Source of the DNA: Pristiophorus japonicus
Taxonomy: Eukaryota
Direction: 5' to 3'
Length of the DNA: 64,000 nucleotides
NCBI RefSeq assembly: GCF_044704955.1
Contig: NC_091999.1
Span: 3,472,001-3,536,000 of the forward strand
The position numbers and the translations under genes are program-made. The stretch's first letter is position 1, and every line of letters begins with the position of its first letter. The notes beneath the pieces are model-generated. The model searched no databases. It had not been told where the DNA came from and was given only the letters and a program-made list of their open reading frames with translations. Below are positions 9,900 through 61,859 of the stretch, in pieces.

Positions 9900-10625
9900 C
9901 TCTAGACTTGACTATTCCAACGCTCTCCTGCCCCGCCTCCCATCTTCCACCCTCCATAAACTTTCTTCCCCATGTCCTAACTCGCACCGAGTCCCGTTCA
10001 CCCATCACCCCCTGTGCTCACTGCCCCGTGTCCTAACTCGCACCGAGTCGCGCTCACCCATCACCCCCTGTGCTCACTGTCCCGTGTCCTAACTCGCACC
10101 GAGTCCCGTTCACCCATCACCCACTGTGCTCGCTGCTCCGTGTCCTAACTCGCACCAAGCCCCGCTCACCCATCACCCCCGTGCTCGCTGCCCCGTGTCC
10201 TAACTCGCACCATGTCCCGCTCACCCATCACCCCCTGTGCTCACTGCCCTGTGTCCTAACTCGCACCAAGTCCCGCTCACCCATCATCCCCTGTGCTCGC
10301 TGCCCCGTGTCCTAACTCGCACCGAGTCGCGCTCACCCATCACCCCCTGTGCTCACTGTCCCGTGTCCTAACTCGCACCGAGTCCCGTTCACCCATCACC
10401 CACTGTGCTCGCTGCTCCGTGTCCTAACTCGCACCAAGTCCCGCTCACCCATCACCCCCGTGCTCGCTGCCCCGTGTCCTAACTCGCACCATGTCCCGCT
10501 CACCCATCACCCCCTGTGCTCACTGCCCTGTGTCCTAACTCGCACCAAGTCCCGCTCACCCATCATCCCCTGTGCTCGCTGACCGACATTGGCTTCCGTT
10601 CTGGCAACACCTTAATTTTAAAGTT
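9900..10625 (+). repeat. L2 LINE fragment with 56-bp tandem expansion
   Basis: Unit gccccgtgtcctaactcgcaccgagtcccgctcacccatcaccccctgtgctcgct; L2 SRLDYSNALL motif upstream. Confidence 0.9.
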
Positions 10626-11229: not shown

Positions 11230-13680
11230 GATTGGGAAACTACATTAAATGGTATGATGGTAGACAAGCAATGACTAGCATTTAAAGAATTAGTACATAA
11301 TTTACAACGAAGGATACATTCCTTTAAAGAGACAAAAAACCCACAGGAAAAGTGGTCCAATCGTGCCTAACGAGAGAAGTTAAAGATACTTTTAGATCAA
11401 AGGAAGAGGTTTTTATGTTACCAAAAAGAGCTGTAAGCCTGAGGATTGGGAGGATTTTAGAATTCAGCAAAGGAGGACCGAGAAATTGATAAACAAAGGA
11501 AAAAGAGAATGAGAGTAAACTAGTGAGAGGCATAAAAACAGATTGTAAAAGCTTCTCTAGGTATGTAAAAAGGAAATGATTAGGGAAAGTAAATGTGGGT
11601 CCCTTACAGGCTGAGACAGGAGAAATTATAATGGGGAATAAGGAAATGGCAGAGAAATTAAACAAATACTGTGTGTCTGTCTTCACGGAAGAAGACGCAT
11701 CAGTATCAGGGGTCTAGCAAGAATGAGGAACTTAAGGAAATTAGTATTAGTAAAAAAAAATAGTACTGGAGAAATTAATGGGACTAAAAGCCGATAGATC
11801 CCCTGGACCTGAGGCCTACATCCTAGGGTTTTGAAAGAGGTGGCTATAGAGATAGTGGATGCATTGGTTGTCATCTTCCAAAATTCCATAGATTCTACAA
11901 CCGCAGATTGGAAGGTAGCAAATTTAACATCACTATTTAAGAAAGGAGGGAGAGAGAAAACGAGGAAATATAGACCAGTTAGCCTGACATCAGTCGCAGG
12001 GAAAATGCTAAAATCTATTATTAAGGACGTGGTAACAGGGCACTTAGCGAATAATAATAGGATTGGGCAGAGTCAACATGGATTTATGAAAGGGAAATCA
12101 TGTTTGACAAATCTTTGAGTTTTGAGGTTGTAACTAGCAAAATAGAAAAGGGGGAAGCAGTGGAGTTTGAAAATCTATTTGGATTTTCAGAAGGCATTCG
12201 ATAAGATGCCACACAAAAGGTTATTCAACAAAATTAGGGCTCGTGGGATTGGAAGTAATGTACTACCATGGATTGAGAACATAAGAACATAAGAAATAGG
12301 AGCAGGAGTCGGCCATTCGGCCCCTCGAGCCTGCTCCACCATTCAATAAGATCATGGCTGATCTGATCATGGACTCAACTCCACTTCCCTGCCCGCTCCC
12401 CATAACCCTTGATTCCCTTATCGTTCAAAAATCTGCCTATCTCCGCCTTAAATATATTCAATGACCCAGTCTCCACAGCTCTCTGGGACAGAGAATTCCA
12501 CAGATTTACAACCCTCTGAGAGAAGAAATTCCTCCTTATTTCTGTTTTAAATGGGTGGCCCCTTATTCTGAAACTGTGCCCCCTAGTTCTAGATTCCCCC
12601 ACGAGGGGATTGAGGTTTGGTTAACGGACAGAAAAGAGAGTAGGAATAAACGGGTCATTTTCAGGTGGGCAGGCTGTAACTAGTGGGGTACCGCAAGGAT
12701 CAGTGCTGGGGCCCCAGCTATTCACAATCTATATCAATGATTTGGATGAGGGGACCAAGTGTAATGTATCCAAGTTTGCTGATGATACAAAGCTCGGTGG
12801 GAATGTAAGTTATGAGGAGGATGCAAAGAGATTTCAAGGGGATATAGACAGGGTAAGTGAGTGGGCAAGAACATGGCAAATGGAATATAATGTGGAGAGA
12901 TGTGAAATTATCCACTTTGGTAGGAAAAATAGAAAAGCAGAGTATTTTTAAATGGTGAGAGATTGGGAAATGTTGGTGTTCGGAGGGACCTGTGTGTCCT
13001 TGTGCACCAATCACTGAACGTTAACACGCAGGTACAGCAAGTGATTATGAAAGCAAATGGTATGTTGGCCTTTATTACAGGAGGATTTGAGTCTAAGAGT
13101 AAAGATGTCTTACTGCGATTATATCGGGCCCTGGTGGGACCACACCTGGAGTATTGTGCACAGTTTGGGTCTCCTTACCTAAGGAAGGATATACTTGCCA
13201 GAGAGGGAGTGCAGCGAAGGTTCACCAGACTGATTCCTGGGATGGGGGGATTGTCCTATGGGGAGAGATTGAGCAGACTGGGCCGATATTCTCGAGAGGT
13301 TAGAATAATAAGAAGTGATCTCATTGAAACATACAAAATTCTTACAGGGTAGATGCAGGGAGGATGTTTCCTCTGGCTGGGGAGTCTAGAACCAGGGGTC
13401 ACAGTCTCAGGATAAGGGGTCGGCCATTTAGGACTGAGATGAGGAGAAATTTCTTCACTCAGGGTGGTGAATCGTTGGAATTCTCTGCCCCAGAGGGCTG
13501 TGGAGGCTCAGTTGTTGAGACAGAGAGCGATAGATTTTTGGATATTAAGGGAATCAAGGGATATGTGGACAGTGCAGGAAAGTGGAGTTGAGGTAGAAGA
13601 TCAGCCATGATCTCATTGAATGGCGGAGCAGGCTCGAGGCGGGTGTATGGTCGACTCCTGCTCCTATTTCTTATGTTCTT
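11230..13680 (+). mobile_element. Degenerate CR1 LINE with nested antisense CR1 3' end (about 12278-12606)
   Basis: RT fragments in ORFs at 11831, 12703, 12963 and 13364. Confidence 0.9.
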
Positions 13681-14099
13681 ACCATTTTTCTTTCTGTCCC
13701 TGTTTCTCTCTTTCTCAACTCACTCTCTCTCTCTCTCTCTCTCTCAACTGTCTCCCGTATCTGTGTGTATCACTCTTGCTGTGACGGAGCTTCACGCAGT
13801 GTGCTGTGCGCAACTGTTGCAGTCAATATGATCAGCGATGTGGGATCCTCCTCTCTCTATTTAAATACGCCACCAATACTGCCTACTGCACCCTGGGAAC
13901 AGCTGGGGCTAGAACCCCCACTTTTGAGCTTATCGCCCAAAAATGGCCACTTTTCTTGGCATTTGTGCATTTCACCTCCGATAACTTTATACTGCATCTA
14001 ACTTCGCCTCTTGACCTTTTTACTTGACAATTTGAACGTTCCCCTGCTCAGCCTCCCATCTTCCACCCTACATAAAGCAGAGCTCTTCCAAAACCCTCC

Positions 14100-14498
14100 T
14101 GCCCCGTGTCCTAACTCGCACCAAGTCCCACTCACCCATCACACCCTGTGTTCGCTGCCCCCGTGTCCTAACTCGCACCAAGTCCCACTCACCCATCACA
14201 CCCTGTGTTCGCTGCCCCCATGTCCTAACTCGCACCAAGTCCCACTCACCCATCACCCCCTGTGTTCGCTGCCCCCGTGTCCTAACTCGCACCCAGTCCC
14301 GCTCACCCATCACCCCCTGTGCTCGCTGACCCCGTGTCCTAACTCGCACCGAGTCCCGCTCATCCATCACCCACTGTGCTCGCTGCCCCGTCTCCTAACT
14401 TGCATCAAGTCCCACTCACCCATCACTTCCTGTGCTCACTGCTCCGTGTCCTAACTCGCACAAAGTCCCACTCACCCATCACCCCCTGTGCTCGCTGA
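14100..14498 (+). repeat. 56-57-bp L2-derived minisatellite
   Basis: Same unit as 9900-10625. Confidence 0.9.
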
Positions 14499-26009: not shown

Positions 26010-26530
26010 TGCTAAGGAGGGATATACTTGCATTGAAGGCTGTCACGAGGTTGATTCCAGAGGTGAGGGGGTTGACTTTATGAAGGTAGGTTGAGTAGGT
26101 TGGGCCTATACACATTGGAGTTCAGAAGAATAAGAGGTGATCTTATTGAAACTTATAAGATAATGAGGGGGCTCGACAAGGTGGATGCAGAGAGGATGTT
26201 TCCACTGATGGGGGAGACTAGAACTAGGGGGCATGATCTTAGAATAAGGGGCCGCCCATTTAAAACTGAGATGAGGAGGAATTTCTTCTCTCAGAGGTTT
26301 GTAAATCTGTGGAATTCTCTGCCCCAGAGAGCTGTGGAGGCTGGGTCATTGAATATATTTAAGGTGGAGATAGACAGATTTTTGAGCGATAAGGGAGTGA
26401 AGGGATATGGGGAGCGGGCGGGGAAGTGGAGCTGAGTCCATGATCAGATCAGCCATAATCTTATTGAATGGCGGAGCAGGCTCGAGGGGCCGAATGGCCG
26501 ACTCCTGCTCCTATTTCTAACGTTCTGATG
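26010..26530 (+). mobile_element. CR1 LINE 3' end
   Basis: ORF 26091-26435 plus tail. Confidence 0.9.
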
Positions 26531-27119
26531 TTCTGCAGCTGGCCCCCTGCCCCTGGGCCTCCAACCCACCCTCCCCTCTCTGCCCCGTCTCTCCCGGTCT
26601 CTGTATCTCACACCTGCCCGATCCCCCTCCCAACATTCCCCCTCATCCCGCCGTACAATCTGAAAGAGGTAACCATGCTTTCTGTCCCAATATACATTTT
26701 GCTTTTAAAAGAAAGAAACAATCTCCGGGCGGGTTTTAAGCCGCGGAGACGTGGTTGGGGCCTGAGCCACGGAAGGCCGGGAGTGGGTTTAATGAGGAGG
26801 CTGTGCTGGGCCAAGCTAGACCGGCAGTAGAATGCAGCCTGTACGTTTTCTAGACTTCTTTCATATTGTATCAGTACTGTTGGGCTAATTAAACATTTGA
26901 GGAATATTAAATAAAAACCTCGCTGCTCTTTATTGGCATCTCATCGCTCTGCCTCGGGTCCACCTCCGATCGCTGGCAGGAGAGAGGGAACTCAAAAAGG
27001 GGGCCCTGAGTGGGGGGGGGGGGGGGGGGGGGGTCGGGTCAGTGGGTCAGGTGCTGACCTGACCTTTCATCCTCGAGGGACCTGGGGTCAGATCCGGTTC
27101 CGGACACACAAGAGATTCA

Positions 27120-29010
27120 ACAACAACAACTTGTATTTATATAGTGCCTTTAACGTAGTGAAACATCGTCACAGGAGTATTGATAGATAAAAATGTTGAC
27201 ATCGAGCCCCATAAGTAGAAATTAGGGCAGGTGACCAAAAGCTTGGCCAAAGAGGTCGGTTTTAAGGAGCATCTTGCTGGAGGAAAGAGAGGTAGAGAGG
27301 CGGAGAGGTTTAGGGAGGGAGTTCCAGAGCTTGGGGTCCAGGCAACAGAAGGCACGGCCACCGATGGTGGAGCGATTATAACCAGGGATGCTCAAGAGGG
27401 CAGAATTAGAGGAGCGCAGACATCTCGGGGGGTTGTGGGGCTGGAGGAGATAACAGAGATAGGGAGGGGCGAGGGCCATGGAGAGATTTGTAAACAAGGA
27501 TGAGAATTTTGAAATCGATGTGTTGCCTAAACGGGAGCCAATGTAGGTCAGCGAGCACAGAGGGTGATGGGTGAGCGGGACTTGGTGTGAGTTCGGACAC
27601 GGGGCAGTGAGCACAGGGGGTGATGGGTGAGTGGGACTTGGTGCGAGTTAGGACACGGGGCAGTGAGCACAGGGGGTGATGGGTGAGCGGGGCTTGGTGC
27701 GAGTTAGGACACGGGGCAGTGAGCACAGCGGGTGATGGGTGAGCGGGGCTTGGTGCGAGTTAGGACATGGGGCAGCGAGCACAGGGGGTGATGGGTGAGC
27801 GGGGCTTGGTGCGAGTTAGGACACGGGGCAGTGAGCACAGGGGGTGATGGGTGAGCGGGACTTGGTGCGAGTTAGGACACGGGGCAGTGAGCACAGGGGA
27901 TGATGGGTGAGCGGGACTCGGTGCGAGTTAGGACATGGGGCAGCGAGCACAGGGGGTGATGGGTGAGCGGGGCTTGGTGCGAGTTAGGACACGGGGCAGT
28001 GAGCACAGGGGGTGATGGGTGAGCGGGACTTGGTGCGAGTTAGGACACGGGGCAGTGAGCACAGGGGATGATGGGTGAGCGGGACTTGGTGCGAGTTAGG
28101 ACACGGGGCAGTGAGCACAGGGGGTGATGGGTGAGTGGGGCTTGGTGCGAGTTAGGACACGGGGCAGTGAGCACAGGGGGTGATGGGTGACCGGGACTCG
28201 GTGCGAGTTAGGACACGGGGCAGTGAGCACAGGGGGTGATGGGTGAGTGGGACTGGGTGCGAGTTAGGACACGGGGCAGCGAGCACAGTGGGTGATGGGT
28301 GAATGGGACTTGGTGCGAGTTAGGACACGGGGCAGTGAGCACAGGGGGTGATGGGTGAGCGGGACTCGGTGCGAGTTAGGACACGGGGCAGCGAGCACAG
28401 GGGGTGATGGGTGAGTGGGACTCGGTGCGAGTTAGGACACGGGGCAGCGAGCACAGGGGGTGATGGGTGAGCGGGACTTGGTGCGAGTTAGGACACGGGG
28501 CAGCGAGCACAGGGGGTGATGGGTGAGTGGGACTCGGTGCGAGTTAGGACACGGGGCAGCGAGCACAGGGGGTGATGGGTGAGCGGGACTTGGTGCGAGT
28601 TAGGACACGGGGCAGCAAGCACAGGGGGTGATGGGTGAGCGGGACTCGGTGCGAGTTAGGACACGGGGCAGCGAGCACAGGGGGTGATGGATGAGCGGGA
28701 CTCGGTGCGAGTTAGGACACGGGGGCAGCGAGCAAAGGGGGGTGATGGGTGAGCGGGACTCGGTGCGAGTTAGGACACGGGGCAGTGAGCACAGGAGGCG
28801 ATGGGTGAGCGGGACTGGGTGCGAGTTAGGACACGGGGCAGCCGAGTTTTGGATCACCTCTAGTTTACGTCAGGTAGAATGTGGGAGGCCGGCCAGGAGT
28901 GTGTTGGGATAGTCAAGTCTAGAGATAACAAAGGCATGGGTGAGGGCTTGAGCAGCAGATGAGCTGAGGCAGGGGTGGAGACGGGTGATGTTACGGAGGC
29001 GGTCTTAGTT
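27120..29010 (-). mobile_element. L2 LINE 3' part with 56-bp tandem array (about 27550-28842)
   Basis: LHWLP, GGRAF..PKLWNSLP motifs and (TTG)n tail. Confidence 0.9.
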
Positions 29011-29457: not shown

Positions 29458-30745
29458 GTGCTGTGTGCGGGAGCGTGCTGTGTGCGGGAGCGTGCTGTGT
29501 GCGGGAGCTTGCTGTGTGCGGGAGCGTGCTGTGTGCGGGAGCTTGCTGTGTGCGGGAGTGTGCGGGAGCGTGCTGTGTGCGGGAGCGTGCTGTGTGCGGG
29601 AGCGTGCTGTGTGCGGGAGCGTGCTGTGTGCGGGAGCGTGCTGTGTGCGGGAGCGTGCTGTGTGCGGGAGCTTGCTGTGTGCGGGAGCGTGCTGTGTGCG
29701 GGAGCTTGCTGTGTGCGGGAGTGTGCGGGAGCATGCTGTGTGCGGGAGCTTGCTGTGTGCGGGAGTGTGCGGGAGCGTGCTGTGTGCGGGAGCTTGCTGT
29801 GTGCGGGAGCTTGCTGTGTGCGGGAGTGTGCGGGAGCGTGCTGTGTGCGGGAGCGTGCTGTGTGCGGGAGCGTGCTGTGTGCGGGAGCGTGCTGTGTGCG
29901 GGAGCGTGCTGTGTGCGGGAGCGTGCTGTGTGCGGGAGCTTGCTGTGTGCGGGAGCTTGCTGTGTGCGGGAGCGTGCTGTGTGCGGGAGCTTGCTGTGTG
30001 CGGGAGTGTGCTGTGTGCGGGAGCGTGCTGTGTGCGGGAGTGTGCGGGAGCGTGCTGTGTGCGGGAGCGTGCTGTGTGCGGGAGCGTGCTGTGTGCGGGA
30101 GCGTGCTGTGTGCGGGAGCGTGCTGTGTGCGGGAGCGTGCTGTGTGCGGGTGTGTGCGGGAGCGTGCTGTGTGCGGGAGCGTGCTGTGTGCGGGAGCGTG
30201 CTGTGTGCGGGAGTGTGCGGGAGCGTGCTGTGTGCGGGAGCGTGCTGTGTGCGGGAGCGTGCTGTGTGCGGGAGCGTGCTGTGTGCGGGAGCTTGCTGTG
30301 TGCGGGAGCGTGCTGTGTGCGGGAGCGTGCTGTGTGCGGGAGCGTGCTGTGTGCGGGAGCGTGCTGTGTGCGGGAGCGTGCTGTGTGCGGGAGCTTGCTG
30401 TGTGCGGGAGCGTGCTGTGTGCGGGAGCGTGCTGTGTGCGGGAGCGTGCTGTGTGCGGGAGCGTGCTGTGTGCGGGAGCGTGCTGTGTGCGGGAGCGTGC
30501 TGTGTGCGGGAGCGTGCTGTGTGCGGGAGCGCGGGAGCGTGCTGTGTGCGGGAGCGTGCTGTGTGCGGGAGCGTGCTGTGTGCGGGAGCGTGCTGTGTGC
30601 GGGAGCGTGCTGTGTGCGGGAGCGTGCTGTGTGCGGGAGCTTGCTGTGTGCGGGAGCGTGCTGTGTGCGGGAGTGTGCGGGAGCGTGCTGTGTGCGAGAG
30701 CTTGCTGTGTGCGGGAGTTTGCTGTGTGCAGGAGCTTGCTGTGAG
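29458..30745 (+). repeat. 17-bp minisatellite (gggagcgtgctgtgtgc) expanded inside a DeuSINE (about 29245-30790)
   Basis: SINE sequence resumes on both sides of the array. Confidence 0.92.
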
Positions 30746-31119
30746 CAAATTGGCTGCTGCCTCTACTAGTTAACGACAGTGACTATACAAAATCCTCCAT
30801 TTAAAGCTCCTGAGGCGGTGATCGTCACAGGCGGGCCCTCGAACCAGGATGACTTGCTTCCACATGTGTTCACAGATATTTCGATGAAGGACCCGATGTT
30901 CCAGCCCTGAACTCCAGTTGAGGGGGTGGAAGATGCCTGTGCGTGGACTTTTTAAAATCAGCCACCACACGGGCGCGACAGAGCTCGGCCTTTATCCAGT
31001 GGCAACGGTTGAACCAGGACAACTGGAGACCGGCCCTGCTGCACGGACCCAGTGCGCACACATATCGCACAGTGTGGGCTGGGCCCTTGCTGCCCCTGGG
31101 CCCTCGGCTCTTCAAGGCC

Positions 31120-31453
31120 AATCTTTCCAATTCTTTGTCAAATCACAAACGCCAGAGGTCACCTTGCACACATCAAGGATCACTCTGCGCCAATGCTCTT
31201 AGCCAAAAGGCCGAGAGCCACTGCACCGTTCCTGGAAGTACTGCAATACCAGGTTCGTGCCATGGAGGTGGATGGGTCAGGCCCCCCACACACCTCCGTG
31301 GAGGTGGATGGGTCAATCCACCCCACCCACCTCCTATTTCCAAAAAGCATAGGAGAACCACCTTCCTGATCCAGGGAGAACCACTTTGGGGTCATGGTTA
31401 CTCCCCTGTCAGGTCAGTTACGCATGATCTTAGCCAAAAGGCCGAGAAGCGAT
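31120..31453 (-). mobile_element. U2/U1 snRNA-chimeric retroposon (SINEU-like) with 11-bp TSD
   Basis: Starts at U2 nt 1 (ATCGCTTCTCGGCCTTTTGGCTAAGATCA). It continues with a U1-like 5' part, U2 Sm-site and 3' stem-loop parts, a second U2 5' copy and a unique tail. TSD TCTTCAAGGCC at 31109-31119 and 31454-31464. Confidence 0.88.
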
Positions 31454-32639
31454 TCTTCAAGGCCCCCGTACCCTCATTCGCCGCACCTTCACCCACAGTG
31501 TTCCGGGGCCCAGCGCTCCAGCTCTATTTATAGCCCCGACCTGCCGTGGTGTTCTCACACAGGTCGGGGCGGCCCACTCAAACTAAGTGACAACTGAAAC
31601 ACACCAGTAAGTTGACATCAAAAAGATGTCCTGAGTAACAAGGAACAACGCATTTTAATAATGTTTATTAAAAGTAGGTTCACACAGCTACAGCAAGCAA
31701 TTTTAAATGGTGCATTCATACTGTGCATCTCATTACTGCAGAGTCGGTTCCCTGGTATAATTACAACGTGAGTTTGGAATTTTTTGCTGGGTGTGAGACA
31801 ATCTGCAGGAAATAGTCTTGTGCTACTGCAGCTTCACAACCAGCTTGATGCAATATTTTTTAAAATTTAAGTTTGAAACAAATTGGGGCAGTCAGTCCAT
31901 TGAAAGACACTGCTGAAATACAAGTTCTTTCTTTCGATCGGTGCAGTCAGTCAGGTGAAGGATCTATCAATGAGGATATGGGAAGGCAACATTCAATCCC
32001 AGCAGGAAGCAGGAATAGAGCTAGAAACATAGAAAATAGGAGCAGGAGTCGGCCATTCGGCCCCTCGAGCCTGCACCGGCATTTAATACGATCATGGCTG
32101 ATCTTCGACCTCAACTCCACTTTCCCGCTCGAGGGGGAGTAACTGGTTCTCCGCAGGGAACAAGGATAGAGTTCGAGGTGGGGGGGGGGGGGGTAAATGG
32201 GTCCCAGCAGGGAACAGGAATAGAACATGAGCAATAGGTGCAGGTGCAGGCCATTCGGCCCCTCGAGCCTGCTCCGCCATTTAATACGATCATGGCTGAT
32301 CTTCGACCTCAACTCCACTTTCCCGCACTATCCCCATATCCCTTCATTACCTTAACGGCCAAAAATCTATCCATCTCGGTCTTGAATATATTCAAAGACT
32401 TGAGCCTCCACAGCCCTCTGGGGCAGAGAATTCCAAAGAAGCACAACTCTGAGTGAAGGCATTTCTCCTCATCTCAGTCCTAAATAGCTGACCTCTTATC
32501 CTAAGACTGTGACCCCTCCAGACTCCAGAGAATATAGGCCCATTCTACTCAATAAAGCTGTGGTTATGTTTGTGGGGGCGGGGGGGGGGGTCGGGAAGGA
32601 AGCACAAAGGGAAATGGGTGTGGGTCTGGGCCTGTGATG

Positions 32640-33570
32640 ATTGGTCTCCAACAACCACAACCATCTGCCTTTGTGACATGGGTGTCCTTGGTGCTCCATC
32701 ACTGCAGGCGTTCCTCAGGGCAGTGTCCTCGGCCCAACCAGCTTCAGCTGCTTCATCAATGACCTTCCCTCCATCATAGGGTCAGAAGTGGGGATGTTCG
32801 CTGCACAGTGTTCAGTTCCATTCTCAACGCCTCCGATAATGGAGCGGTCCGTGCCCACATGCAGCAAGACCTGGACAACATTCAGGCTTGGGCTGATAAG
32901 TGGCAAGTAACATCCGCGCCACACAAGTGCCAGGCAATGACCATCTCCAACAAGCGAGAGTCTTACCACCGCCACTTGACATTCAACGGCATTCCCATCG
33001 CCGAATCCCCCACCGTCAACATCCTGGGGGTCACCATTGACCAGAAACTTAACTGGACCAGCCATAAATACTGTGGCTACAGGAGCGGATCAGAGGCTGG
33101 GTATTCTGCGGTGAGTGTCTCTCCTCCCGACTCCCCAAAGCCTTTCCACCATCTACAAGACGCAAGTCAGGAGTGTGATGGAACACTCCCCACTTGCCTG
33201 GATGAGTTCAGCTCCAACAACACTCGAGAAGCTCGACACCATCCAGGACAAAGCAGGCCGCTCGATCGACACGCTCCCCACCACCTTCAACACTCACTCC
33301 CTCCACCACCGGCGCACCGTGGCTGCAGTGTGCACCGTCTACAAGATGCACTGCAGCAACTCGCCAAGGCTTCTTCGGCAGCACCTCCCAAACCCGCGAC
33401 CTCTACCACCTAGAAAATCCTGGAACTCCCTCCCTAACAGCACTGTGGGAGCACCTTCACCACACGGACTGCAGCGGTTCAAGAAGGCGGATCACCACCA
33501 CCTTCTCCAGGGGCAATTAGGGATGGCCAATAAATTCCGGCCTTGCCAGCGGCGCCCACATCCCCAGGAC
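32640..33570 (+). mobile_element. Second CR1-like LINE family, 3' part
   Basis: [10 protein letters not shown]-like DNA, QQDLDNIQAWADKWQV, YKTQVRSVMEHSPLAW. Confidence 0.85.
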
Positions 33571-36599: not shown

Positions 36600-39500
36600 A
36601 TTACAGGCATTTGAATTTCACGCCTCCAGCGAGGTTCAGCGGCCTCTGCCGCTTCCCTCCCATCCCCGAGCCCACCGGGCCTAACTTCCCCAAGGTTCCC
36701 CCCTGCCCCTGCCCTGAACTTGCATCTCTCCTCCTGCCCTCTCCGACTTCATCTTTCCCATGAGACCCACCTCCTGCTCCCTGGGCCCTATTCCCACTAA
36801 ACCCCTGACCACACACCTTCCCGACCTGGCCCCCCGTGTTAGCCGACGTTTCCCTCTCCTCAAGTACTGTCCTCCTCAAAACTCCCACCCTTGCCCCCCT
36901 CTGTCCTTGCAAGCTACTGCCCCATCTCCAACCTCCCTTTCCCAAAGTCCTTCAGCGTGTTGTCGTCTCCCAAATCCGTGCCCACCTTTCCCGCAACTCG
37001 ATGTGTGAATCAACTTTCCACACGACCGAAACGCCCCTTATCAAAGTCACAAAAGGCATCCTGTGTAACTAACAGAAAGACTTGCATTTATATAGCGCCT
37101 TTCACAACCACCGGACGTCGCAATGCGCTTTACAGCCAATGCAGTACTTTCGGAGTGTAGTCACTGTTGTAATGTGTGGGAAACGCCAATTTGCGCACAG
37201 CAAGCTCCCACACACACACAGCAATGTGATAATGACCCAGATAATCTGTTTTTGTTATGTTGATTGAGGGATAAATATTGGCCCCAGGACCCCGGGGAGA
37301 ACTCCCCCCTGCTCTTCTTCCAAATAGTGGCCGTGGGATCTTGTACTATCCACCCGAGAGAGCAGACGGGGCCCTCGGTTTAACGTCTCATCCGAAAGAC
37401 GGCACCTCCGACAGTGCAGCACTCCCTCAGCACCGCACTGAAGTGTCGGTCTAGATTTGTTTGCGCTCAGCTATTGCCTCCTGGTCCTTCTCGACTTGTC
37501 TGCAACTTTTAACATGATTAACCACACCATCCCCCTCCAACACCTCTCCTCCACCGTCCAGCTGGATGGGACTGCCCTCGCCTGCTTCCATTCTTATCTA
37601 TCCAGGTATCACCTGCAATGGCTTCTCTTCCCGATCCCGCACCAACACCCCCTCCTATTTCTCATCTCCATGTAGTGCCCCTTGGCGATATCATCCGAAA
37701 ACACAGCGTCAGTTTCCACATGTAGGCTGACAACACCCAGCTCTACCTCACCCCCACCTTCTCTCTACCCCTCCACGGTCCCTAAATTGTCAGACTGCTT
37801 GTCCCACATCCAGTTCTGGATGAGGAGAAATTTCCTCCGTCTAAATATCGGGAAGACCAAAGCCATTGTTTTCGGTCCCTTGCCACAAACTCCGTTCCCT
37901 GGACACTGACTCCATCCCTCGCCCCAACTCCTGTCTGAGGCTGAACCAGACTGTTCGCAACCCAGGTGTCGTATTTGACCACATAACCGTAGCATAACTA
38001 TGACCGCCTATTTCCACCTCCGTAACATCGCCTGTCTCCACCCTTGCCTCAGCTCATCCACTGCTGAAAACCTCATCCATGCCTTTGTTACCTCAAGACT
38101 TAACTATTCCACCGCATCCTGGCCGGCCTTCCACATTCTACCCGACGTAAACTAGAGGTGATCCAAAACTCGGCTGCCCCATGTCCTAACTCGCACCAAG
38201 TCCCGCTCACCCATCACCCCCCTGTGCTCGCTGCCCCCGTGTCCTAACTCGCACCGAGTCCCGCTCACCCATCACCTCCTGTGCTCGCTGCCCCGTGTTC
38301 TAACTCGCACCGAGTCCCGCTCACCCATCACCCCCTGTGCTCGCTGCCCCATGCCCTAACTCACACCGAGTCCCGCTCACCCATCACCCCCTGTGCTCGC
38401 TGCCCCGTGTCCTAACTCGCACCCAGTCCCACTCACCCATCACCCCCTGTGCTCACTGCCCCGTGTCCTAACTCACACCGAGTTCCGCTCACCCATCACC
38501 CCCTGTGCTCACTGCCCCGTGTCCTAACTCACACCCAGTCCCGCTCACCCATCACCCCCTGTGCTCACTGCCCCGTGTCCTAACTCGCACCAAGTCCTGC
38601 TCACCCATCACCCCCTGTACTCGCTGCCCCGTGTCCTAACTCGCACCGAGTCCCGCTCACCCATCGCCCCCTGTGCTCGCTGACCCGTGTCCTAACTCGC
38701 ACCGAGTCCCGCTCACCCATCGCCCCCTGTGCTCGCTGACCCGTGTCCTAACTCGCACCGAGTCCCGCTCACCCATCGCCCCCTGTGCTCGCTGACCCGT
38801 GTCCTAACTCGCACCGAGTCCCGCTCACCCATCACCCCCTGTGCTCACTGCCCCGTGTCCTAACTCGCACCAAGTCCCGCTCACCCATCACCCCCTGTGC
38901 TCGCTGCCCCGTGTCCTAACTCGCACCAAGTCCCGCTCACCCATCGCCCCCTGTGCTCGCTGACCCGTGTCCTAACTCGCACCAAGTCCCGCTCACCCAT
39001 CGCCCCCTGTGCTCACTGATCTACATCGGCTCCCGGTTAAGTAACACTTCGAAATGTTATGTATGCAATAAAGGTTCAAATTGAGTACTGTTTAACTAAG
39101 CAAGGTACACCCTTGGCTCAGCTTTATTTAGACCCAAAGTGCCTGACTCTCAAAATGGCTGGCCTTTTCTACCTGCGCCGCACCATGTGCGTGCTGCTCA
39201 GTGGCCTCCAACAATGCCGCCATCTGGTGGCTACAAACAGAATGTACATACATGACAACTTCGTTTTCAAAATTCTCATCCTTGTTGACAAATCCCTCCA
39301 TGGCCCTCTCCCCTCCCTATCTCTGTAATCTCCTCCAGCCCCACAACCCCCCGAGATGTCTGCGCTCCTCTAATTCTGCCCCCCTGACCATCCCCGATTT
39401 TAATCGCTTAACCAATGGCGGCCGCGCCTTCAGCTGCCTGGGCCCCAAGCTCTGGAACTCCCTCCCTAAACCTCTCCGCCTCTCTACCTCTCTTTCCTCC

Positions 39501-42464: not shown

Positions 42465-44500
42465 TAACAACAACAACAACAACAACAACCACCTGTATTT
42501 ATACAGCGCCTTTAATGTAGTCAAACATCCCAAGGCGCTTCACAGCAGTGTTTGAAGACAAAGCAATACATTTGACCCCGAACCACATAAGAAGAAATGA
42601 CGGCAGGCAACCAAATTCTTGGTCAAAGAGGTAGGTTTTGAGGAGCGTCTTACAGTAGGAAAGCGAGGCGGAGAGGTTCAGGGAGGGAGTTCCAGAGCTC
42701 GGGGCCCAGGCAACAGAAGTCACGGCCACCGATGGTGGAGCGATTATAATCGGGGATGGTCAAGAGGCCAACAAATTGGAGGAGCGCAGAGATCTCAGGG
42801 GGCTGTGGGGCTGGAGGGGAATACAGAGATAGGGAGGGGTGAGACCATGGAGGGATTTGAAAACGAGGATGAGAATTTTTACTGGACCGAGAGCCAATGT
42901 AGGTCAGTGAGCACAGGGGGTGATGGGTGAGTGGGACTGGGTGCGAGTTAGGACACTGGGCAGCGAGCACAGCGGGTGATGGGTGAGCGGGAATCGGTGC
43001 GAGTTAGGACATGGGGCAGCAAGCACAGGGGGTGATGGGTGAACGGGACTCGGTGCGAGTTCGGACACGGGGCAGTGAGCACAGGGGGTGATGGGTGAGC
43101 AGGACTCGGTGCGAGTTAGGACACGGGGCCGTGAGCACAGGGGGTGATGGGTGAGCGGGACTGGGTGCGAGTTAGGACACGGGGCAGTGAGCACAGGGGG
43201 TGATGGGTGAGCGGGACTCGGTGCGAGTTAGGACATGGGGCAGCGAGCACAGGGGGTGATGGGTGAGCGGGACTCGGTGCGAGTTAGCACACGGAGCAGC
43301 GAGCACAGGGGGTGATGGGTGAACAGGACTCGGTGCGAGTTAGGACACGGGGCAGTGAGCACAGGGGGTGATGGGTGAGCGGGACTGGGTGCGAGTTAGG
43401 ACATGGGGCAGTGAGCACAGGGGGTGATGGGTGAGCGGGACTGGGTGCGAGTTAGGACATGGGGCAGCGAGCACAGGGGGTGATGGGTGAATGGGACTCG
43501 GTGCGAGTTAGGACATGGGGCAGCGAGCACAGGGGGTGATGGGTGAGCGGGACTCGGTGCGAGTTAGGACACGGGCAGCGAGCACAGGGGGTGATGGGTG
43601 AGCGGGACTGGGTGCGAGTTAGGACACGGGGCAGTGAGCACAGGGGGTGATGGGTGAGTGGGACTGGGTGCGAGTTAGGACACGGGGCAGTGAGCACAGG
43701 GGGTGATGGGTGAGCGGGACTGGGTGCGAGTTAGGACATGGGGCAGCGAGCACAGGGGGTGATGGGTGAGTGGGACTCGGTGCGAGTTAGGACATGGGGC
43801 AGTGAGCACAGGGGGTGATGGGTGAGTGGGACTCGGTGCGAGTTAGGACACGGGGCAGTGAGCACAGGGGGTGATGGGTGAGCGGGACTCGGTGTGAGTT
43901 AGGGCACGGGCAGCGAGCACAGGGGGTGATGGGTGAGCGGGACTCGGTGCGAGTTAGGACACGGGGCAGTGAGCACAGGGGGTGATGGGTGAGCGGGACT
44001 CGGTGTGAGTTAGGACACGGGCAGCGAGCACAGGGGGTGATGGGTGAGCGGGACTCGGTGCGAGTTAGGACACGGGGCCGTGAGCACAGGGGGTGATGGG
44101 TGAGCGGGACTAGGTGCGAGTTAGGACACGGGGCAGTGAGCACAGGGGGTGATGGGTGAGCGGGACTCGGTGCGAGTTAGGACATGGGGCAGCGAGCACA
44201 GGGGGTGATGGGTGAGTGGGACTGGGTGCGAGTTAGGACACGGGGCAGCGAGCACAGGGGGTGATGGGTGAGCGGGACTCGGTGCGAGTTAGGACACGGG
44301 CAGCGAGCACAGGGGGTGATGGGTGAGCGGGACTCGGTGTGAGTTAGGACACAGGGGCAGCGAGCACAGGGGGTGATGGGTGAGCGGGACTGGATGCGAG
44401 TTAGGACACGGGGCAGCGAGCACAGGGGGTGATGGGTGAGCGGGACTCGGTGCGAGTTAGGACATGGGGCTGCCGAGTTTTGGATGAGCTGAAGTTTACG
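42465..44500 (-). mobile_element. L2 LINE 3' end with 56-bp array (about 42905-44472) inside the V-J interval
   Basis: (TTG)n tail and same family as 27120-29010. Confidence 0.9.
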
Positions 44501-45439: not shown

Positions 45440-46409
45440 GTGAGTAATCTTTTTTTTAATCCTTCACTGGCCTCAGAGGCTTCGATCAGTTCTTGTTGCA
45501 AATGTTGCTTGTTGCTGCTTTGTTGGGGGTGGGCTCGGGAGAGGGGGCCAGGGGGAGGGCGGGTGAGTGTTCAGTATTGATTACCCCTTTCAGATGCTAA
45601 TCTGTGTTGGAACCGTTAAGTGGGGCTGTGGGGGGGGACGGGGGGGCGTGGTGTGTCGGCCAGGACTGTCGTTCTTTGCGGGTCTCGAAATTTCTCTTTA
45701 AGGAGGTACGTGCATTTCTATAGCACCTTCCACGACCTCAGGACATCCAAGGAGGTATTTTTTTTTCTCCCCCCAAAGTGCAGCCGCCGCCGTAACGTAG
45801 GAAACGCGGCAGCCGATCTGCGCACAGCAAGATCCCACAGACGACACTGCGAGAAACGGCCAGATCGTCTGTGGGATCTTGCTGTGCGCAGCTGGGGGGG
45901 GGGGGTGGGGGGCCGGTGGGAATTAAAAATTCAATGAATTAAATAAACCTGGAATTTAAAAAGCTAGTCAGGGCGAGCATGAAACTACCAAATTGTCGTT
46001 TAAAAAACACCCATCTGGCTCACCAATGTCCCTTAGGGAAGGAAAACCTGTCCTTCTCACCCGCTCCAGATTCCCACTACCTTTTGTGTGAAGAAATGCT
46101 TCCTGCTTTTCCTCCTGAATGGTCCCGCTCCAATTTTAAGATGGTGCCCCCCTTGTCCGAATTCCCGCCCGACCGGGGGAAATAAGCTTCCCCATGTCTA
46201 CCCGAGCAAATCCTTTTAACACTTTCAACACCTCCAGCAGACCAGCCTCAATCTTCTGTCCTACAGGGGATCCGAGCCAAGTTTATGCTGTGCTTGTCTC
46301 ATAATTGGCTCGGTCTGTCTCACTCTCACCTCTGAGTCAGTGGGTCGGGGGTTCGAGACCCCCCGCTCCAGAGACTCGAGCCATGTAATCCAGGGGCAAC
46401 ACCCCCGGT

Positions 46410-47560
46410 GCCAGTACTGAGGGAGCGCCGCACTGTCGGAGGGGCAGTACTGAGGGAGCGCCGCACTGTCGGAGGGGCAGTACTGAGGGAGCGCCGCACT
46501 GTCGGAGGGGCAGTACTGAGGGAGCGCCGCACTGTCGGAGGGGCAGTACTGAGGGAGCGCCGCACTGTCGGAGGGGCCGTACTGAGGGAGCGCCGCACTG
46601 TCGGAGGGGCAGTACTGAGGGAGCGCCGCACTGTCGGAGGGGCAGTACTGAGGGAGCGCCGCACTGTCGGAGGGGCAGTACTGAGGGAGCGCCGCACTGT
46701 CGGAGGGGCAGTACTGAGGGAGCGCCGCACTGTCGGAGGGGCAGTACTGAGGGAGCGCCGCACTGTCGGAGGGGCAGTACTGAGGGAGCGCCGCACTGTC
46801 GGAGGGGCAGTACTGAGGGAGCGCCGCACTGTCGGAGGGGCAGTACTGAGGGAGCGCCGCACTGTCGGAGGGGCAGTACTGAGGGAGCGCCGCACTGTCG
46901 GAGGGGCAGTACTGAGGGAGCGCCGCACTGTCGGAGGGGCAGTACTGAGGGAGCGCCGCACTGTCGGAGGGGCAGTACTGAGGGAGCGCCGCACTGTCGG
47001 AGGGGCAGTACTGAGGGAGCGCCGCACTGTCGGAGGGGCAGTACTGAGGGAGCGCCGCACTGTCGGAGGGGCAGTACTGAGGGAGTGCTGCACTGTCGGA
47101 GGGGCAGTACTGAAGGAGCGCCGCACTGTCGGAGGGGCAGTACTGAGGGAGTGCTGCAATGTCGGAGGGGCAGTGCTGAGGGAGCGCTGCACTGTCAGAG
47201 GGACAGTAGTGAGGGTGCACCAGACTGTCGGAGGGGCAGTACTGAGGGAGCGCTGCACTGTCGGAGGGGCAGTACTGAGGGAGCGCCATTCTGTCGCAGG
47301 GGCAGTACTGAGGGAGCGCCGCACTGTCGGAGGGGCAGTACTGAGGGAGCGCCCCACTGTCGGAGGGGCAGTACTGAGGGAGCGCCCCTCTGTCGGAGGG
47401 GCAGTACTGAGGGAGCGCTGCACTGTCGGAGGGGCAGTACTGAGGGAGCGCTGCACTGTCGGAGGGGCAGTACTGAGGGAGCGCTGCACTGTCGGAGGGA
47501 CAGTACTGAGGGAGCGCTGCACTGTCGGAGGGGCAGTACTGAGGGAGCGCTGCACTGTTG
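46410..47560 (+). repeat. 33-bp minisatellite inside a DeuSINE (about 46320-47890)
   Basis: cagtactgagggagcgccgcactgtcggagggg repeats; a shorter antisense array lies at about 50175-50340. Confidence 0.92.
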
Positions 47561-48090
47561 GAGGTGGTATCTTTCGGATGAGACGTTAAATCCAGGCCCC
47601 GTCTGCCCTCTCAGGTGGATGTAAAATATTCCACGGCCACTGCTTTGAAGAAGAGCAGGGGTGTTGTACCCCCGGGGTCCTGCTGCCAATAATTATTCCT
47701 TGACCAACATTACTAAAAAAAGTATTATCTGGTCGTTTACTTCATTGCTATTTGTGGGATCTTGCTGTGCGCAAATTGCCTGTCGCGTTTCCAACATTAC
47801 CACAAGTGACAACACTTCAAAAAGTACCTCATTGGCTGTAAGGCATTATAGGACGTCCTGAGATGGTAAAAGGCACTATATAAATTCAAGTTATTTCTTT
47901 ATTTTTGATTCTAGCCCCCAGGGGAAAGCGTTTCTCTGCAACAATCCTGCCAACAATTTCAACGGCCGTTTTGGTCGTGGTTGGCGAGCCCCTCTCTGCT
48001 GTCACTCCCGGACGAGCCAGTCGCTTGCTAGTTGGCTTTCCTTCCCCGGGAGTTAAAATCGATTCCCTCTCATTCTGACTGGAGAAGCCC

Positions 48091-53610: not shown

Positions 53611-53938
53611 GAGGGGCGGGGGGGGGGGGGGGGGGGGGGGTAAAAGGGGCAGGGGGTTGCATCTCCTGCGCTTGCCCGGGAAGGATTATGTGGCCGGAAG
53701 CTCATTTCGGGGCCGCGAACCAAGGTTGCGAACGGTCTGGTTCAGCCTCAGACAGGAGTTGGGGGCGAGGGATGGGGGTTGGTGGCTCGGGAACGCAGTT
53801 TGTGGCAGGGGGGGGGGAGGGTGGGGGGGTGAGGGGGGGAGAAGCGGTGGTGAGGTGGAGCTGGGGGTAAACGTGGAATATGTACATACGTTGTCTAACC
53901 CGTCTCTCGTTCCTTCCCCCCCCCCCCCCTCTCCGCAG

Positions 53939-58391: not shown

Positions 58392-59798
58392 CCCCACACC
58401 CCTCACTGTAACACTGATATAAACCCACACGCCTCAGTGTAACTCTGATATACCCCACACCCCTCAGTGTAACTCTGATATACCCCTCACCCCTCAGTGT
58501 AACTCTGATATACCCCTCACCCCTCAGTGTAACTCTGATATACCCCACACCCCTCAGTGTAACTCTGATATACCCCTCACTGTAACACTGATATACCCCA
58601 CACCCCTCACTGTAACACTGATATACCCCACACCCCTCACTTAACACTGATATACCCCACACCCCTCACTGTAACACTGATATACCCCACACCCCTCACT
58701 GTAACACTGATATACACCACACCCCTCACTGTAACACTGATATACTCCACACCCCTCAGTGTAACACTGATATATCCCACACCCCTCACTGTAACACTGA
58801 TATACCCCACACCCCTCACTGTAACACTGATATATCCCACACCCCTCAGTGTAACACTGATATATCCCACACCCCTCACTGTAACACTGATATATCCCAC
58901 ACCCCTCACTGTAACACTGATATACCCCACATCCCTCAGTGTAACACTGATATACCCCACACCCCTCAGTGTAACACTGATATACCCCCCACCCCTCACA
59001 GTAACACTGATATAACCCACACCCCTCACTGTAACACTGATATACCCCACACCCCTCACTGTAACACTGATATATCCCACACCCCTCAGTGTAACACTGA
59101 TATATCCCACACCCCTCACTGTAACACTGATATACCCCACATCCCTCAGTGTAACACTGATATACCCCACACCCCTCACTGTAACACTGATATACCCCAC
59201 ACCCCTCACTGTAACACTGATATATCCCACACCCCTCAGTGTAACACTGATATATCCCACACCCCTCAGTGTAACACTGATATATCCCACACCCCTCACT
59301 GTAACACTGATATACCCCACACCCCTCACTGTAACACTGATATACCCCACACCCCTCAGTGTAACACTGATATACCCCACACCCCTCAGTGTAACACTGA
59401 TATACCCCCCACCCCTCACAGTAACACTGATATAACCCACACCCCTCACTGTAACACTGATATACCCCACACCCCTCACTGTAACACTGATATACCCCAC
59501 AACCCTCACTGTAACACTGATATACTCCACACCCCTCAGTGTAACACTGATATATCCCACACCCCTCACTGTAACACTGATATACCCCACACCCCTCACT
59601 GTAACACTGATATATCCCACACCCCTCAGTGTAACACTGATATACCCCACACCCCTCACAGTAACACTGATATAACCCCCATTGTAACACTGATATACCC
59701 CACACGCCTCACTGTAACACTGATATACCCCACACCCCTCACTGTAACACTGATATACCCCTCATTGTAACACTGATATACCCCACACCCCTCAGTGT
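58392..59798. repeat. 30-bp minisatellite, left part
   Basis: cccctcactgtaacactgatataccccaca. Confidence 0.95.
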
Positions 59799-59799
59799 A

Positions 59800-61856: not shown

Positions 61857-61859
61857 TCA

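What the first reader, a model, noticed from the sequence alone, without database searches (positions are those of the whole stretch)
31120..31453. Retroposon assembled from U2 and U1 snRNA modules: a candidate shark SINEU-like family
Seen on the minus strand, in order: (a) 31453-31425 reads ATCGCTTCTCGGCCTTTTGGCTAAGATCA, identical to recalled vertebrate U2 nt 1-29; similarity runs to about nt 35, into the branch-point pairing region. (b) 31420-31371 is U1-like (ACTGACCTGACAGGGGAGTAACCATGA..GTGGTTCTCCCTGG versus U1 ACTTACCTGGCAGGGGAGATACCATGA..GTGGTTTTCCCAGG). (c) 31371-31352 is a second U1 stem-loop I piece, GATCAGGAAGGTGGTTCTCC. (d) 31350-31327 resembles the U2 Sm-site region (ATGCTTTTTGGAAATAGGAG). 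(e) A duplicated CCATCCACCTCCA is followed by the U2 3' stem-loop IV CCTGGTATTGCAGTACTTCCAGGAACGGTGCA, ending at 31222. (f) A second U2 5' piece TCTCGGCCTTTTGGCTAAGA lies at about 31216-31197. (g) About 76 nt of unique, non-polyA tail follows. A perfect 11-bp TSD (TCTTCAAGGCC) brackets the element inside an RTE-tailed repeat, and the 5' end is exactly U2 +1. Established: U1/U2-headed SINEs (SINEU) are described from crocodilians, with recurrent 5' addition of snRNA pieces and proposed Tx1 mobilisation. Inference: this is an independently evolved SINEU-like family in sharks, which I do not recall being described. The transcript would carry U1-70K-, Sm- and U2B''-like binding modules.
Basis: partly seen in the sequence, partly recalled or inferred. 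Interest (0 to 1): 0.92.

Follow-up and report, generated by a model that had tools for sequence, protein, structure and literature searches.

The report
Retroposon built from U2/U1 snRNA pieces
A 334-base mobile-element copy stitched together from pieces of the spliceosomal U2 and U1 RNAs has inserted into another repeat; it looks like a fish counterpart of the SINEU elements known only from crocodilians, but I could not count its copies.

Summary
On the minus strand, 31453-31120 is a 334-nt insertion. It is bracketed by a perfect 11-bp target-site duplication (0.08 expected by chance) and starts exactly at U2 +1. Rfam scores 31453-31216 as a full-length but rearranged U2 (61.7 bits, gathering 46). 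U2 stem-loops IIa/IIb are replaced by the U1 5' end plus stem-loop I. U2 stem-loop III carries a 36-nt tandem duplication. A second U2 piece (nt 7-26, 20/20) and a 73-nt unassigned tail without poly(A) follow. The flanks rejoin into a sequence that aligns straight through the junction with an uninterrupted paralogue.

The duplication is perfect and the U2 head is 29/29, yet the U1 module is about 76% canonical and the two halves of the internal duplication agree at 88%. The source RNA was therefore already an evolved composite, not fresh snRNAs. That fits a SINEU-type master element.

Seven unchecked first-reader notes describe similar elements elsewhere in this genome. "Shark", independent origin and absence from Repbase/Dfam are unverified.

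Verdict: partly supported; a new member of a known kind; interest moderate.

The parts
31454..31464 (-). Upstream copy of the 11-bp target-site duplication, GGCCTTGAAGA
   Evidence: only two exact occurrences in the window, both abutting the element; 0.08 expected.
31419..31453 (-). U2 snRNA nt 1 to about 35. Stem-loop I is intact. The branch-point recognition sequence GUAGUA is cut after GUA.
   Evidence: the first 29 nt match exactly. Rfam alignment, posterior probability near 1; stem-loop I folds.
31371..31420 (-). U1 snRNA 5' end (ACUGACCUG against the canonical ACUUACCUG) plus stem-loop I. It stands where U2 stem-loops IIa/IIb should be.
   Evidence: Rfam U1 positions 1-49 aligned, 23.4 bits, E 9e-4; canonical 23-mer with 3 mismatches, 0 expected; the hairpin folds.
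31352..31371 (-). Second, partial U1 stem-loop I: the loop and the 3' strand, GATCAGGAAGGTGGTTCTCC
   Evidence: 18/20 to the canonical U1 string (from memory), a single hit in the window, 0 expected.
31331..31350 (-). U2 Sm-site region, with GCUUUUUGG in place of the canonical GAUUUUUGG
   Evidence: aligned to U2 model positions about 95-115 with high posterior probability.
31263..31334 (-). U2 stem-loop III region carrying a 36-nt tandem duplication. Each copy can form its own hairpin.
   Evidence: period 36, 2.0 copies, 88% matches; two hairpins. Rfam shows a 45-nt insert in stem-loop III.
31216..31262 (-). U2 stem-loop IV and 3' end.
31197..31216 (-). Second U2 5' piece (U2 nt 7-26). It directly abuts the U2 3' end. 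Similarity runs to 31193.
   Evidence: U2 positions 7-26, 20/20; 24-nt self-match at 96%; stem-loop I folds.
31120..31192 (-). Tail of 73 nt with no known origin. It has no poly(A) and contains a predicted hairpin. It is the presumed recognition end for the mobilising LINE.
   Evidence: no Rfam family at E<=10; fold z = -2.4; no similarity to any other window sequence or to the CR1-like 3' ends.
31109..31119 (-). Downstream copy of the 11-bp target-site duplication
30747..31108 (-). Host interspersed repeat downstream of the insertion. It continues upstream of 31464.
   Evidence: copies at about 25.6-25.9 kb, 6.6-6.9 kb and 9.0-9.2 kb, 74-77% identical; the rebuilt empty site aligns through the junction.

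Best explanation
This is one retroposed copy of a non-autonomous, snRNA-headed retroposon of the SINEU type.

Its RNA was a composite:
- U2 nt 1-35
- U1 nt 1-48, with part of stem-loop I repeated
- U2 nt about 93-188, with a 36-nt duplication in stem-loop III
- U2 nt about 2-30
- a 73-nt tail

Shown: the RNA started at U2 +1, was reverse-transcribed, and was integrated into an interspersed repeat with an 11-bp target-site duplication. Shown indirectly: the composite already existed and had diverged before this insertion, so it came from a source (master) locus and not from bona fide snRNAs.

Inferred:
- The composite grew by reverse-transcriptase template switches. Two joins sit at RNA ends: the U2 3' end joined to the U2 5' end, and the U1 piece starting at about U1 +1.
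- The master is transcribed by RNA polymerase II, from an snRNA-type or other upstream promoter outside the element. Runs of four and five T inside the element would stop polymerase III.
- A LINE that recognises the hairpin-bearing tail without poly(A) supplied the endonuclease and reverse transcriptase.
- The element belongs to a multi-copy family in this genome.
For: Retroposition:
- Perfect 11-bp duplication abutting U2 +1 and the end of the tail.
- The rebuilt empty site aligns without a break across the junction with a paralogue that lacks the insertion.

snRNA origin:
- Rfam U2 at 61.7 bits, above the gathering score, full model.
- Second U2 piece 20/20.
- U1 positions 1-49, and two canonical U1 strings that occur only here.

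Evolved source. The duplicated target site is 11/11, the U2 head 29/29 and the second U2 piece 20/20. Yet the U1 module is about 39/51 to canonical U1 (my own alignment, from memory of human U1), and the two halves of the 36-nt duplication agree at only 88%. If the 24% divergence of the U1 module had arisen after insertion, 71 unchanged bases would have a chance of about 3e-9; at 6% per base it would be about 0.01.

Other points:
- Stems are kept: fold z = -3.9 for 31256-31453.
- Polymerase III is unlikely: TTTTT at the Sm site and TTTT in both copies of U2 stem-loop I. Kojima used the same argument for SINEU.
- The architecture parallels SINEU-3 (5' 32 bp of U2, an internal deletion, more U2, then a unique 3' end) and the 5' additions of SINEU-1.
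- SINEU target-site duplications are about 10 bp.

Leads only: seven unchecked first-reader notes on similar chimeric U2/U1 retroposons elsewhere in this genome.
Against: - There is one copy in 64 kb, and no other snRNA-like fragment down to E 0.5.
- I retrieved no second copy by any route.
- There is no poly(A) tail, whereas all crocodilian SINEU have one.
- No LINE in the window shares the tail, so the partner is unknown.
- No promoter or transcript evidence was obtained.
- The U1 covariance score is far below Rfam's gathering score.
Confidence: 0.72

Rival explanations
1. It is a one-off chimeric retro-pseudogene. In a single LINE reverse-transcription event the enzyme jumped between an unrelated RNA (the tail), U2, U1 and U2 again, as in the L1-made U6/U3/snRNA chimeras of mammals. 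No family exists.
For: - Single copy in the window.
- Some joins sit at RNA termini, as template switching predicts.
- The 3' end has no poly(A), like 'tailless' snRNA retropseudogenes (cites Schmitz 2004 and Buzdin 2002).
Against: - A fresh chimera of bona fide snRNAs should be near-identical to them. Here the duplicated target site is still 11/11, yet the U1 module is about 76% canonical, U1 stem-loop I is partly repeated, and stem-loop III holds a duplication whose halves differ by 12%.
- The U1 piece sits inside U2 and needs two internal switches.
- Unchecked notes report the same U2-U1-U2 order at other loci.
Confidence: 0.1
2. It is a retrocopy of a low-copy composite locus, such as a rearranged snRNA pseudogene read through by polymerase II. 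That locus was picked up only a handful of times and is not a proliferating SINE with a dedicated LINE partner.
For: - The source had diverged before insertion.
- No internal promoter is known for U1 or U2, so copies should be dead on arrival.
- No partner LINE tail was found.
Against: - Seven notes in about 117 annotated windows would imply roughly one copy per Mb. These notes are unchecked, and several may describe one locus.
- Crocodilian SINEU families reached a substantial share of all SINE sequence despite having no internal promoter.
Confidence: 0.15
3. It is a functional variant snRNA gene, or a chance or assembly artefact.
For: Stems I, III and IV, and an Sm-like site, are preserved.
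Against: - The target-site duplication lies inside an interspersed repeat, so the upstream DNA belongs to the host repeat and no snRNA promoter came with the element.
- The U2 branch-point recognition sequence and stem-loops IIa/IIb are gone.
- The matches are far beyond chance.
Confidence: 0.03

Closest known systems
SINEU-3 of crocodilians (Kojima 2015, PMC4494074)
   Same: Both have a U2 head of about 32-35 nt starting at the U2 5' end, an internal deletion of the U2 stem-loop II region, the U2 3' part retained, and then a short 3' sequence unrelated to U2. Both are non-autonomous, contain oligo-T runs and have no known internal promoter.
   Different: Here the deleted U2 region is filled by U1 nt 1-48. 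Stem-loop III is duplicated, a second U2 5' piece follows the U2 3' end, and the tail has no poly(A). SINEU-3 inserts almost only into Mariner-N4_AMi; this copy lies in an unrelated interspersed repeat. Sequence-level kinship could not be tested because no Repbase sequences were available.
SINEU-1 and SINEU-2 of crocodilians
   Same: These are mosaics of U1 and U2 pieces, with repeated addition of snRNA sequence at the 5' end that is attributed to template switching. Their target-site duplications are about 10 bp.
   Different: SINEU-2 is U1 at the 5' end and U2 at the 3' end; here the order is U2-U1-U2-U2. All have poly(A) tails and a proposed Tx1-Mar partner. Neither feature is shown here.
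Chimeric and tailless snRNA retropseudogenes made by L1 (Buzdin 2002, Garcia-Perez 2007, Schmitz 2004, as cited in PMC4494074)
   Same: snRNA sequence is joined to other RNA by template switching and flanked by target-site duplications; some lack poly(A).
   Different: Those are independent one-off events that use contemporary snRNA sequence. This copy derives from an already diverged composite source.
U2-targeting LINEs Keno (Tx1 clade) and Utopia (PMC4640811)
   Same: They insert at U2 nt 38|39. A transcript driven by the U2 promoter would therefore carry a U2 head of about 38 nt or less, close to the roughly 35-nt and 30-nt U2 heads seen here. An unchecked note reports a Tx1 poly(A) tail next to U2 fragments in this genome.
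   Different: No LINE coding sequence or Keno-like end is present in or beside this element. The link is a hypothesis only.

Membership tests
SINEU (snRNA-headed SINEs) | The 5' head derives from the U1 or U2 snRNA gene | tested here: met
   Rfam U2 at 61.7 bits, above the gathering score of 46. The element starts at U2 +1 with 29/29 identity. U1 pieces.
SINEU (snRNA-headed SINEs) | Short, non-coding and retroposed, with target-site duplications | tested here: met
   334 nt. Perfect 11-bp duplication. The empty site is contiguous in a paralogue.
SINEU (snRNA-headed SINEs) | A multi-copy family with shared joins and independent insertions | not testable with these tools
Searches were blank. Only unchecked notes remain.
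SINEU (snRNA-headed SINEs) | A 3' poly(A) tail, present in all crocodilian SINEU | tested here: not met
   The element ends ...TTGGAAAGATT directly before the duplicated target site. [quoted passage not shown] This describes the known families; it is not part of the class definition.
SINEU (snRNA-headed SINEs) | Mobilised by Tx1-clade LINEs, with a shared target preference | not tested
   The RT-bearing LINE copies examined in the window share CR1-type 3' ends; their clade was not formally classified. The target repeat has three uninterrupted copies in the window. Tx1 in this genome is known only from unchecked notes.
SINEU (snRNA-headed SINEs) | Sequence descent from the crocodilian SINEU consensus, as opposed to an independent origin | not testable with these tools
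   No Repbase or Dfam library was available.
Functional U2 snRNA gene | Branch-point recognition sequence GUAGUA and stem-loops IIa/IIb | tested here: not met
   a 3-nt gap in GUAGUA, and the stem-loop IIa position replaced by a 30-nt U1-like insert.
Functional U1 snRNA gene | A full four-stem U1 that reaches the Rfam gathering score | tested here: not met
   23.4 bits against 69.5. Only positions 1-49 align with confidence.
One-off template-switch chimera (L1-type snRNA chimeric retrogene) | Modules near-identical to the contemporary source RNAs at the time of insertion | tested here: not met
   The duplicated target site is perfect, but the U1 module is about 76% canonical and the halves of the internal duplication agree at 88%.

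The most novel reading that the evidence does not exclude
A second, independently assembled lineage of snRNA-headed SINEs exists in a cartilaginous fish. It would be recently active (perfect target-site duplication, nine CpGs retained). It would have been built by serial template switching from U2 and U1 RNAs onto a tail without poly(A) that a stringent LINE recognises. If so, polymerase II snRNA transcripts have become SINE heads at least twice in vertebrates, and the U2 heads of about 30-35 nt may trace back to co-transcripts of U2-targeting Keno-like Tx1 elements.
Probability: 0.5. Interest if true: 0.6.

Novelty: new member of a known kind. Interest (0 to 1): 0.45.

Why it matters
In the literature I could search, SINEs whose heads come from polymerase II snRNA genes have been described from one lineage only, the crocodilians. 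How they are transcribed without an internal promoter is still open.

A young family in a distant vertebrate would show that this route to a SINE recurs. With its perfect target-site duplication and its start exactly at U2 +1, it would offer fresher copies for three tasks: mapping the master locus and its promoter, identifying the partner LINE, and testing whether Sm-site and stem-loop IV biogenesis signals help such RNAs reach LINE machinery.

It also matters for annotation. Covariance scans will call such copies U2 genes, as Rfam did here above its gathering score.

Tried and rejected
One exception was unintended: I asked for 31256-31453, but the findings tool widened the stretch itself to 29756-32953. 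It returned nothing.

2. The look-up of sequencing runs gave only coded DNA-type runs of 'organism A' and no RNA holder. Three very small runs hold 19-27% of the words. That could be the element or the host repeat, and I could not tell which.

3. A protein-word search with the 66-aa antisense reading of 31258-31455, meant to catch ORFs called on paralogous copies, found no candidates.

4. Exact-pattern scans of metagenome contigs with the U2/U1 junction and with the U1 module gave 0 hits. This was expected, and it says nothing about the genome.

5. Findings look-ups by place (near), by sequence and by relatives were blank.

6. Partner LINE: the tail has no match in the window. It does not resemble the abundant CR1-like 3' ends...CTCCTGCTCCTATTTCTTATGTTCT....

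7. Origin of the tail: by eye, short patches recall U6 (AATTGGAAAGAT, TGTGCAAGGTGAC). This rests on memory only. Rfam finds no U6 or any other family at E<=10, so I rejected it as unsupported.

8. The Prion_pknot hit at 31260-31311 on the plus strand (31.2 bits, below 39) is a by-product of the 36-nt duplication.

9. The host repeat as a LINE 5' UTR: the 0.7-7 kb region is a mosaic of repeats, not one clean full-length LINE. Left open.

10. The organism ('shark') was not verified.

Full report
**What is there.** Read on the minus strand, window 31453-31120 is a 334-nt block. It is bracketed by GGCCTTGAAGA at 31464-31454 and 31119-31109. These are the only two exact occurrences of that 11-mer in 64 kb, against 0.08 expected.

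I joined the upstream flank, keeping one copy of the 11-mer, to the downstream flank. The joined sequence aligns straight through the junction with a paralogous copy of the same interspersed repeat at about 25.7-25.9 kb, and with a second copy at about 6.7-7.0 kb. So this is a true insertion with a target-site duplication (TSD) into a repeat. That repeat has at least three uninterrupted copies in the window, 74-77% identical.

**Origin of the modules.**
- At curated thresholds, Rfam gives a single hit in the whole window: U2 (RF00004), 31453-31216 minus strand, model positions 1-192, 61.7 bits against a gathering score of 46.
- The first 29 nt equal the U2 5' end exactly.
- The Sm-site region and stem-loop IV align with posterior probability near 1.
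- The branch-point recognition sequence is cut (GUA---ACUG). The stem-loop IIa position holds a 30-nt insert, and stem-loop III holds a 45-nt insert.
- That 45-nt insert is part of a 36-nt tandem duplication at 31263-31334, 2.0 copies, 88% matches.
- The sequence that replaces U2 stem-loop II is U1. Rfam U1 aligns model positions 1-49 to 31420-31372 with confidence. Because only a third of U1 is present, the score is just 23.4 bits, with E 9e-4 in 801 nt and 0.039 in 32.7 kb.
- As an independent check I searched the window for two canonical U1 strings, typed from my own memory of human U1. Each occurs once, inside the element, with 3 and 2 mismatches, against 0 expected. The second string marks a partial repeat of the stem-loop I loop and 3' strand at 31371-31352.
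- After the U2 3' end comes a second U2 5' piece, positions 7-26, 20/20. A 24-nt self-match at 96% confirms it.
- A 73-nt tail follows. It matches no Rfam family at E<=10 and nothing else in the window. It has no poly(A) and contains a predicted hairpin.
- The U2 and U1 stem-loops I and both stem-loop III copies fold as expected (z = -3.9).

**A fresh chimera or a copy of an evolved element?** The divergence is very uneven.
- Unchanged: the TSD (11/11), the U2 head (29/29), the second U2 piece (20/20) and the loop of stem-loop IV.
- Diverged: the U1 module, about 39/51 to canonical U1 by my own alignment from memory; the repeated part of stem-loop I; and the two halves of the 36-nt duplication, which differ by 12%.

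If the changes in the U1 module had arisen after insertion, about 71 untouched bases elsewhere would be vanishingly unlikely. The chance is about 3e-9 at 24% divergence and about 0.01 even at 6%. So the RNA that was reverse-transcribed was already a rearranged, diverged composite. There was a source locus distinct from the real snRNA genes. This argues against a single-event template-switch chimera of bona fide snRNAs and fits a SINE master lineage.

**How it probably works.**

Shown:
- The RNA began at U2 +1.
- It was copied and inserted with an 11-bp TSD at a site that is not A-rich.

Inferred:
1. Assembly was by template switching. The U2 3' end joins directly to a U2 5' end, and the U1 piece begins at about U1 +1. 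Kojima proposed the same mechanism for the recurrent 5' additions in SINEU-1.
2. Transcription is by polymerase II from a promoter outside the element. U1 and U2 genes have only upstream promoters, and the element contains TTTTT and TTTT runs that would terminate polymerase III. Kojima made the same argument for SINEU.
3. Mobilisation is by a LINE that recognises a specific 3' tail rather than poly(A). That LINE is not in the window. The abundant LINE 3' ends here are CR1-like, ending in ...TATTTCTTATGTTCT..., and are unrelated to the tail.
4. The two U2 heads stop at about nt 35 and about nt 30. Keno (Tx1 clade) and Utopia LINEs insert at U2 nt 38|39. A U2-promoter co-transcript of such an insertion would begin with a U2 head of about that length. 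This is a lead, not a finding.

**Family status: the weak point.**
- The window holds one copy, and no other snRNA-like fragment down to E 0.5.
- The look-up of sequencing runs returned seven coded runs of one organism, none on record as RNA.
I therefore have no depth or copy-number data.
In one search the findings tool itself widened my 31256-31453 request to 29756-32953. That was unintended, and it returned nothing.
- A protein-word search with an antisense reading of 31258-31455 was blank. So were two metagenome pattern scans.
- The scan's own notebook lists seven unchecked first-reader notes on chimeric U2/U1 (one also 'U6-like') retroposons on other pieces of this genome, one of them 1.98 Mb beyond this window. 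It also lists several notes on Tx1 elements.
- These notes are leads, not evidence. Some may describe the same locus, and none has been followed up. If real, they imply roughly one copy per Mb.

**Comparison with what is known.** SINEU (Kojima 2015, PMC4494074) is the only described class of snRNA-headed SINEs. That paper states that none were detected outside crocodilians, that all have poly(A) tails, that TSDs of about 10 bp occur, and that Tx1-Mar LINEs are the likely partners.

SINEU-3 is the closest in design: 32 bp of the U2 5' end, an internal deletion, 83 bp of U2, then about 40 bp of unique 3' sequence.

This element differs in four ways:
- a U1 module fills the deleted region;
- stem-loop III is duplicated;
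- a second U2 head is present;
- the tail has no poly(A).

Later reviews and searches in the held library give no snRNA-headed SINE in cartilaginous fishes. Repbase and Dfam could not be queried.

**Verdict.** I rate it a new member of a known kind, of moderate interest.

Noticed in passing
window 29458-30743: A 1.3-kb tandem array of a 17-bp unit (GTGCTGTGTGCGGGAGC, about 80 copies, 88% matches) begins within a few bases of where the host repeat carrying the insertion ends.
   Followed up: no
window 9968-10581, 14102-14497, 27549-28841, 38173-39018, 42905-44470: The same 56-57-bp satellite unit occurs in five separate arrays, in both orientations, across the window.
   Followed up: no
window 58392-59800 and 61858-63650: Two long arrays of one 30-bp unit (CACACCCCTCACTGTAACACTGATATACCC) flank a CR1-like reverse-transcriptase region at 59817-61756.
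   Followed up: no
window, e.g. 61700-61860, 13540-13700, 26390-26540, 12430-12270(-), 32170-31990(-): At least 13 copies of a CR1-like LINE 3' end...GGCCGAATGGCCGACTCCTGCTCCTATTTCTTATGTTCT... It is the most abundant repeat in the window, and one copy lies about 0.6 kb upstream of the element.
   Followed up: partly
window 31527-31576 (minus strand), 70-120 bp upstream of the insertion: Within the sequence just upstream of the insertion, a 12-bp perfect inverted repeat (CCCCGACCTGTG...CAGGTCGGGG) is followed by CTATAAATAG, in the same orientation as the inserted element. Read-through from such a site could transcribe this copy. This is speculative.
   Followed up: no
window 31120-31192 (minus strand): By eye, and from memory of U6, the tail has short U6-like patches (AATTGGAAAGAT, TGTGCAAGGTGAC). 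Another window's unchecked note also says 'U6-like'. Rfam finds no U6 match at E<=10.
   Followed up: partly
window 53803-53938 (+): A hairpin-like stretch draws weak matches to three microRNA precursor families, all far below their gathering scores. It is probably a repeat artefact.
   Followed up: no
window 46261-47589: A 33-bp tandem array (35 copies, 95% matches) produces long ORFs on both strands. One draws spurious 'Mucin-like' and 'Colipase-like' Pfam hits.
   Followed up: no
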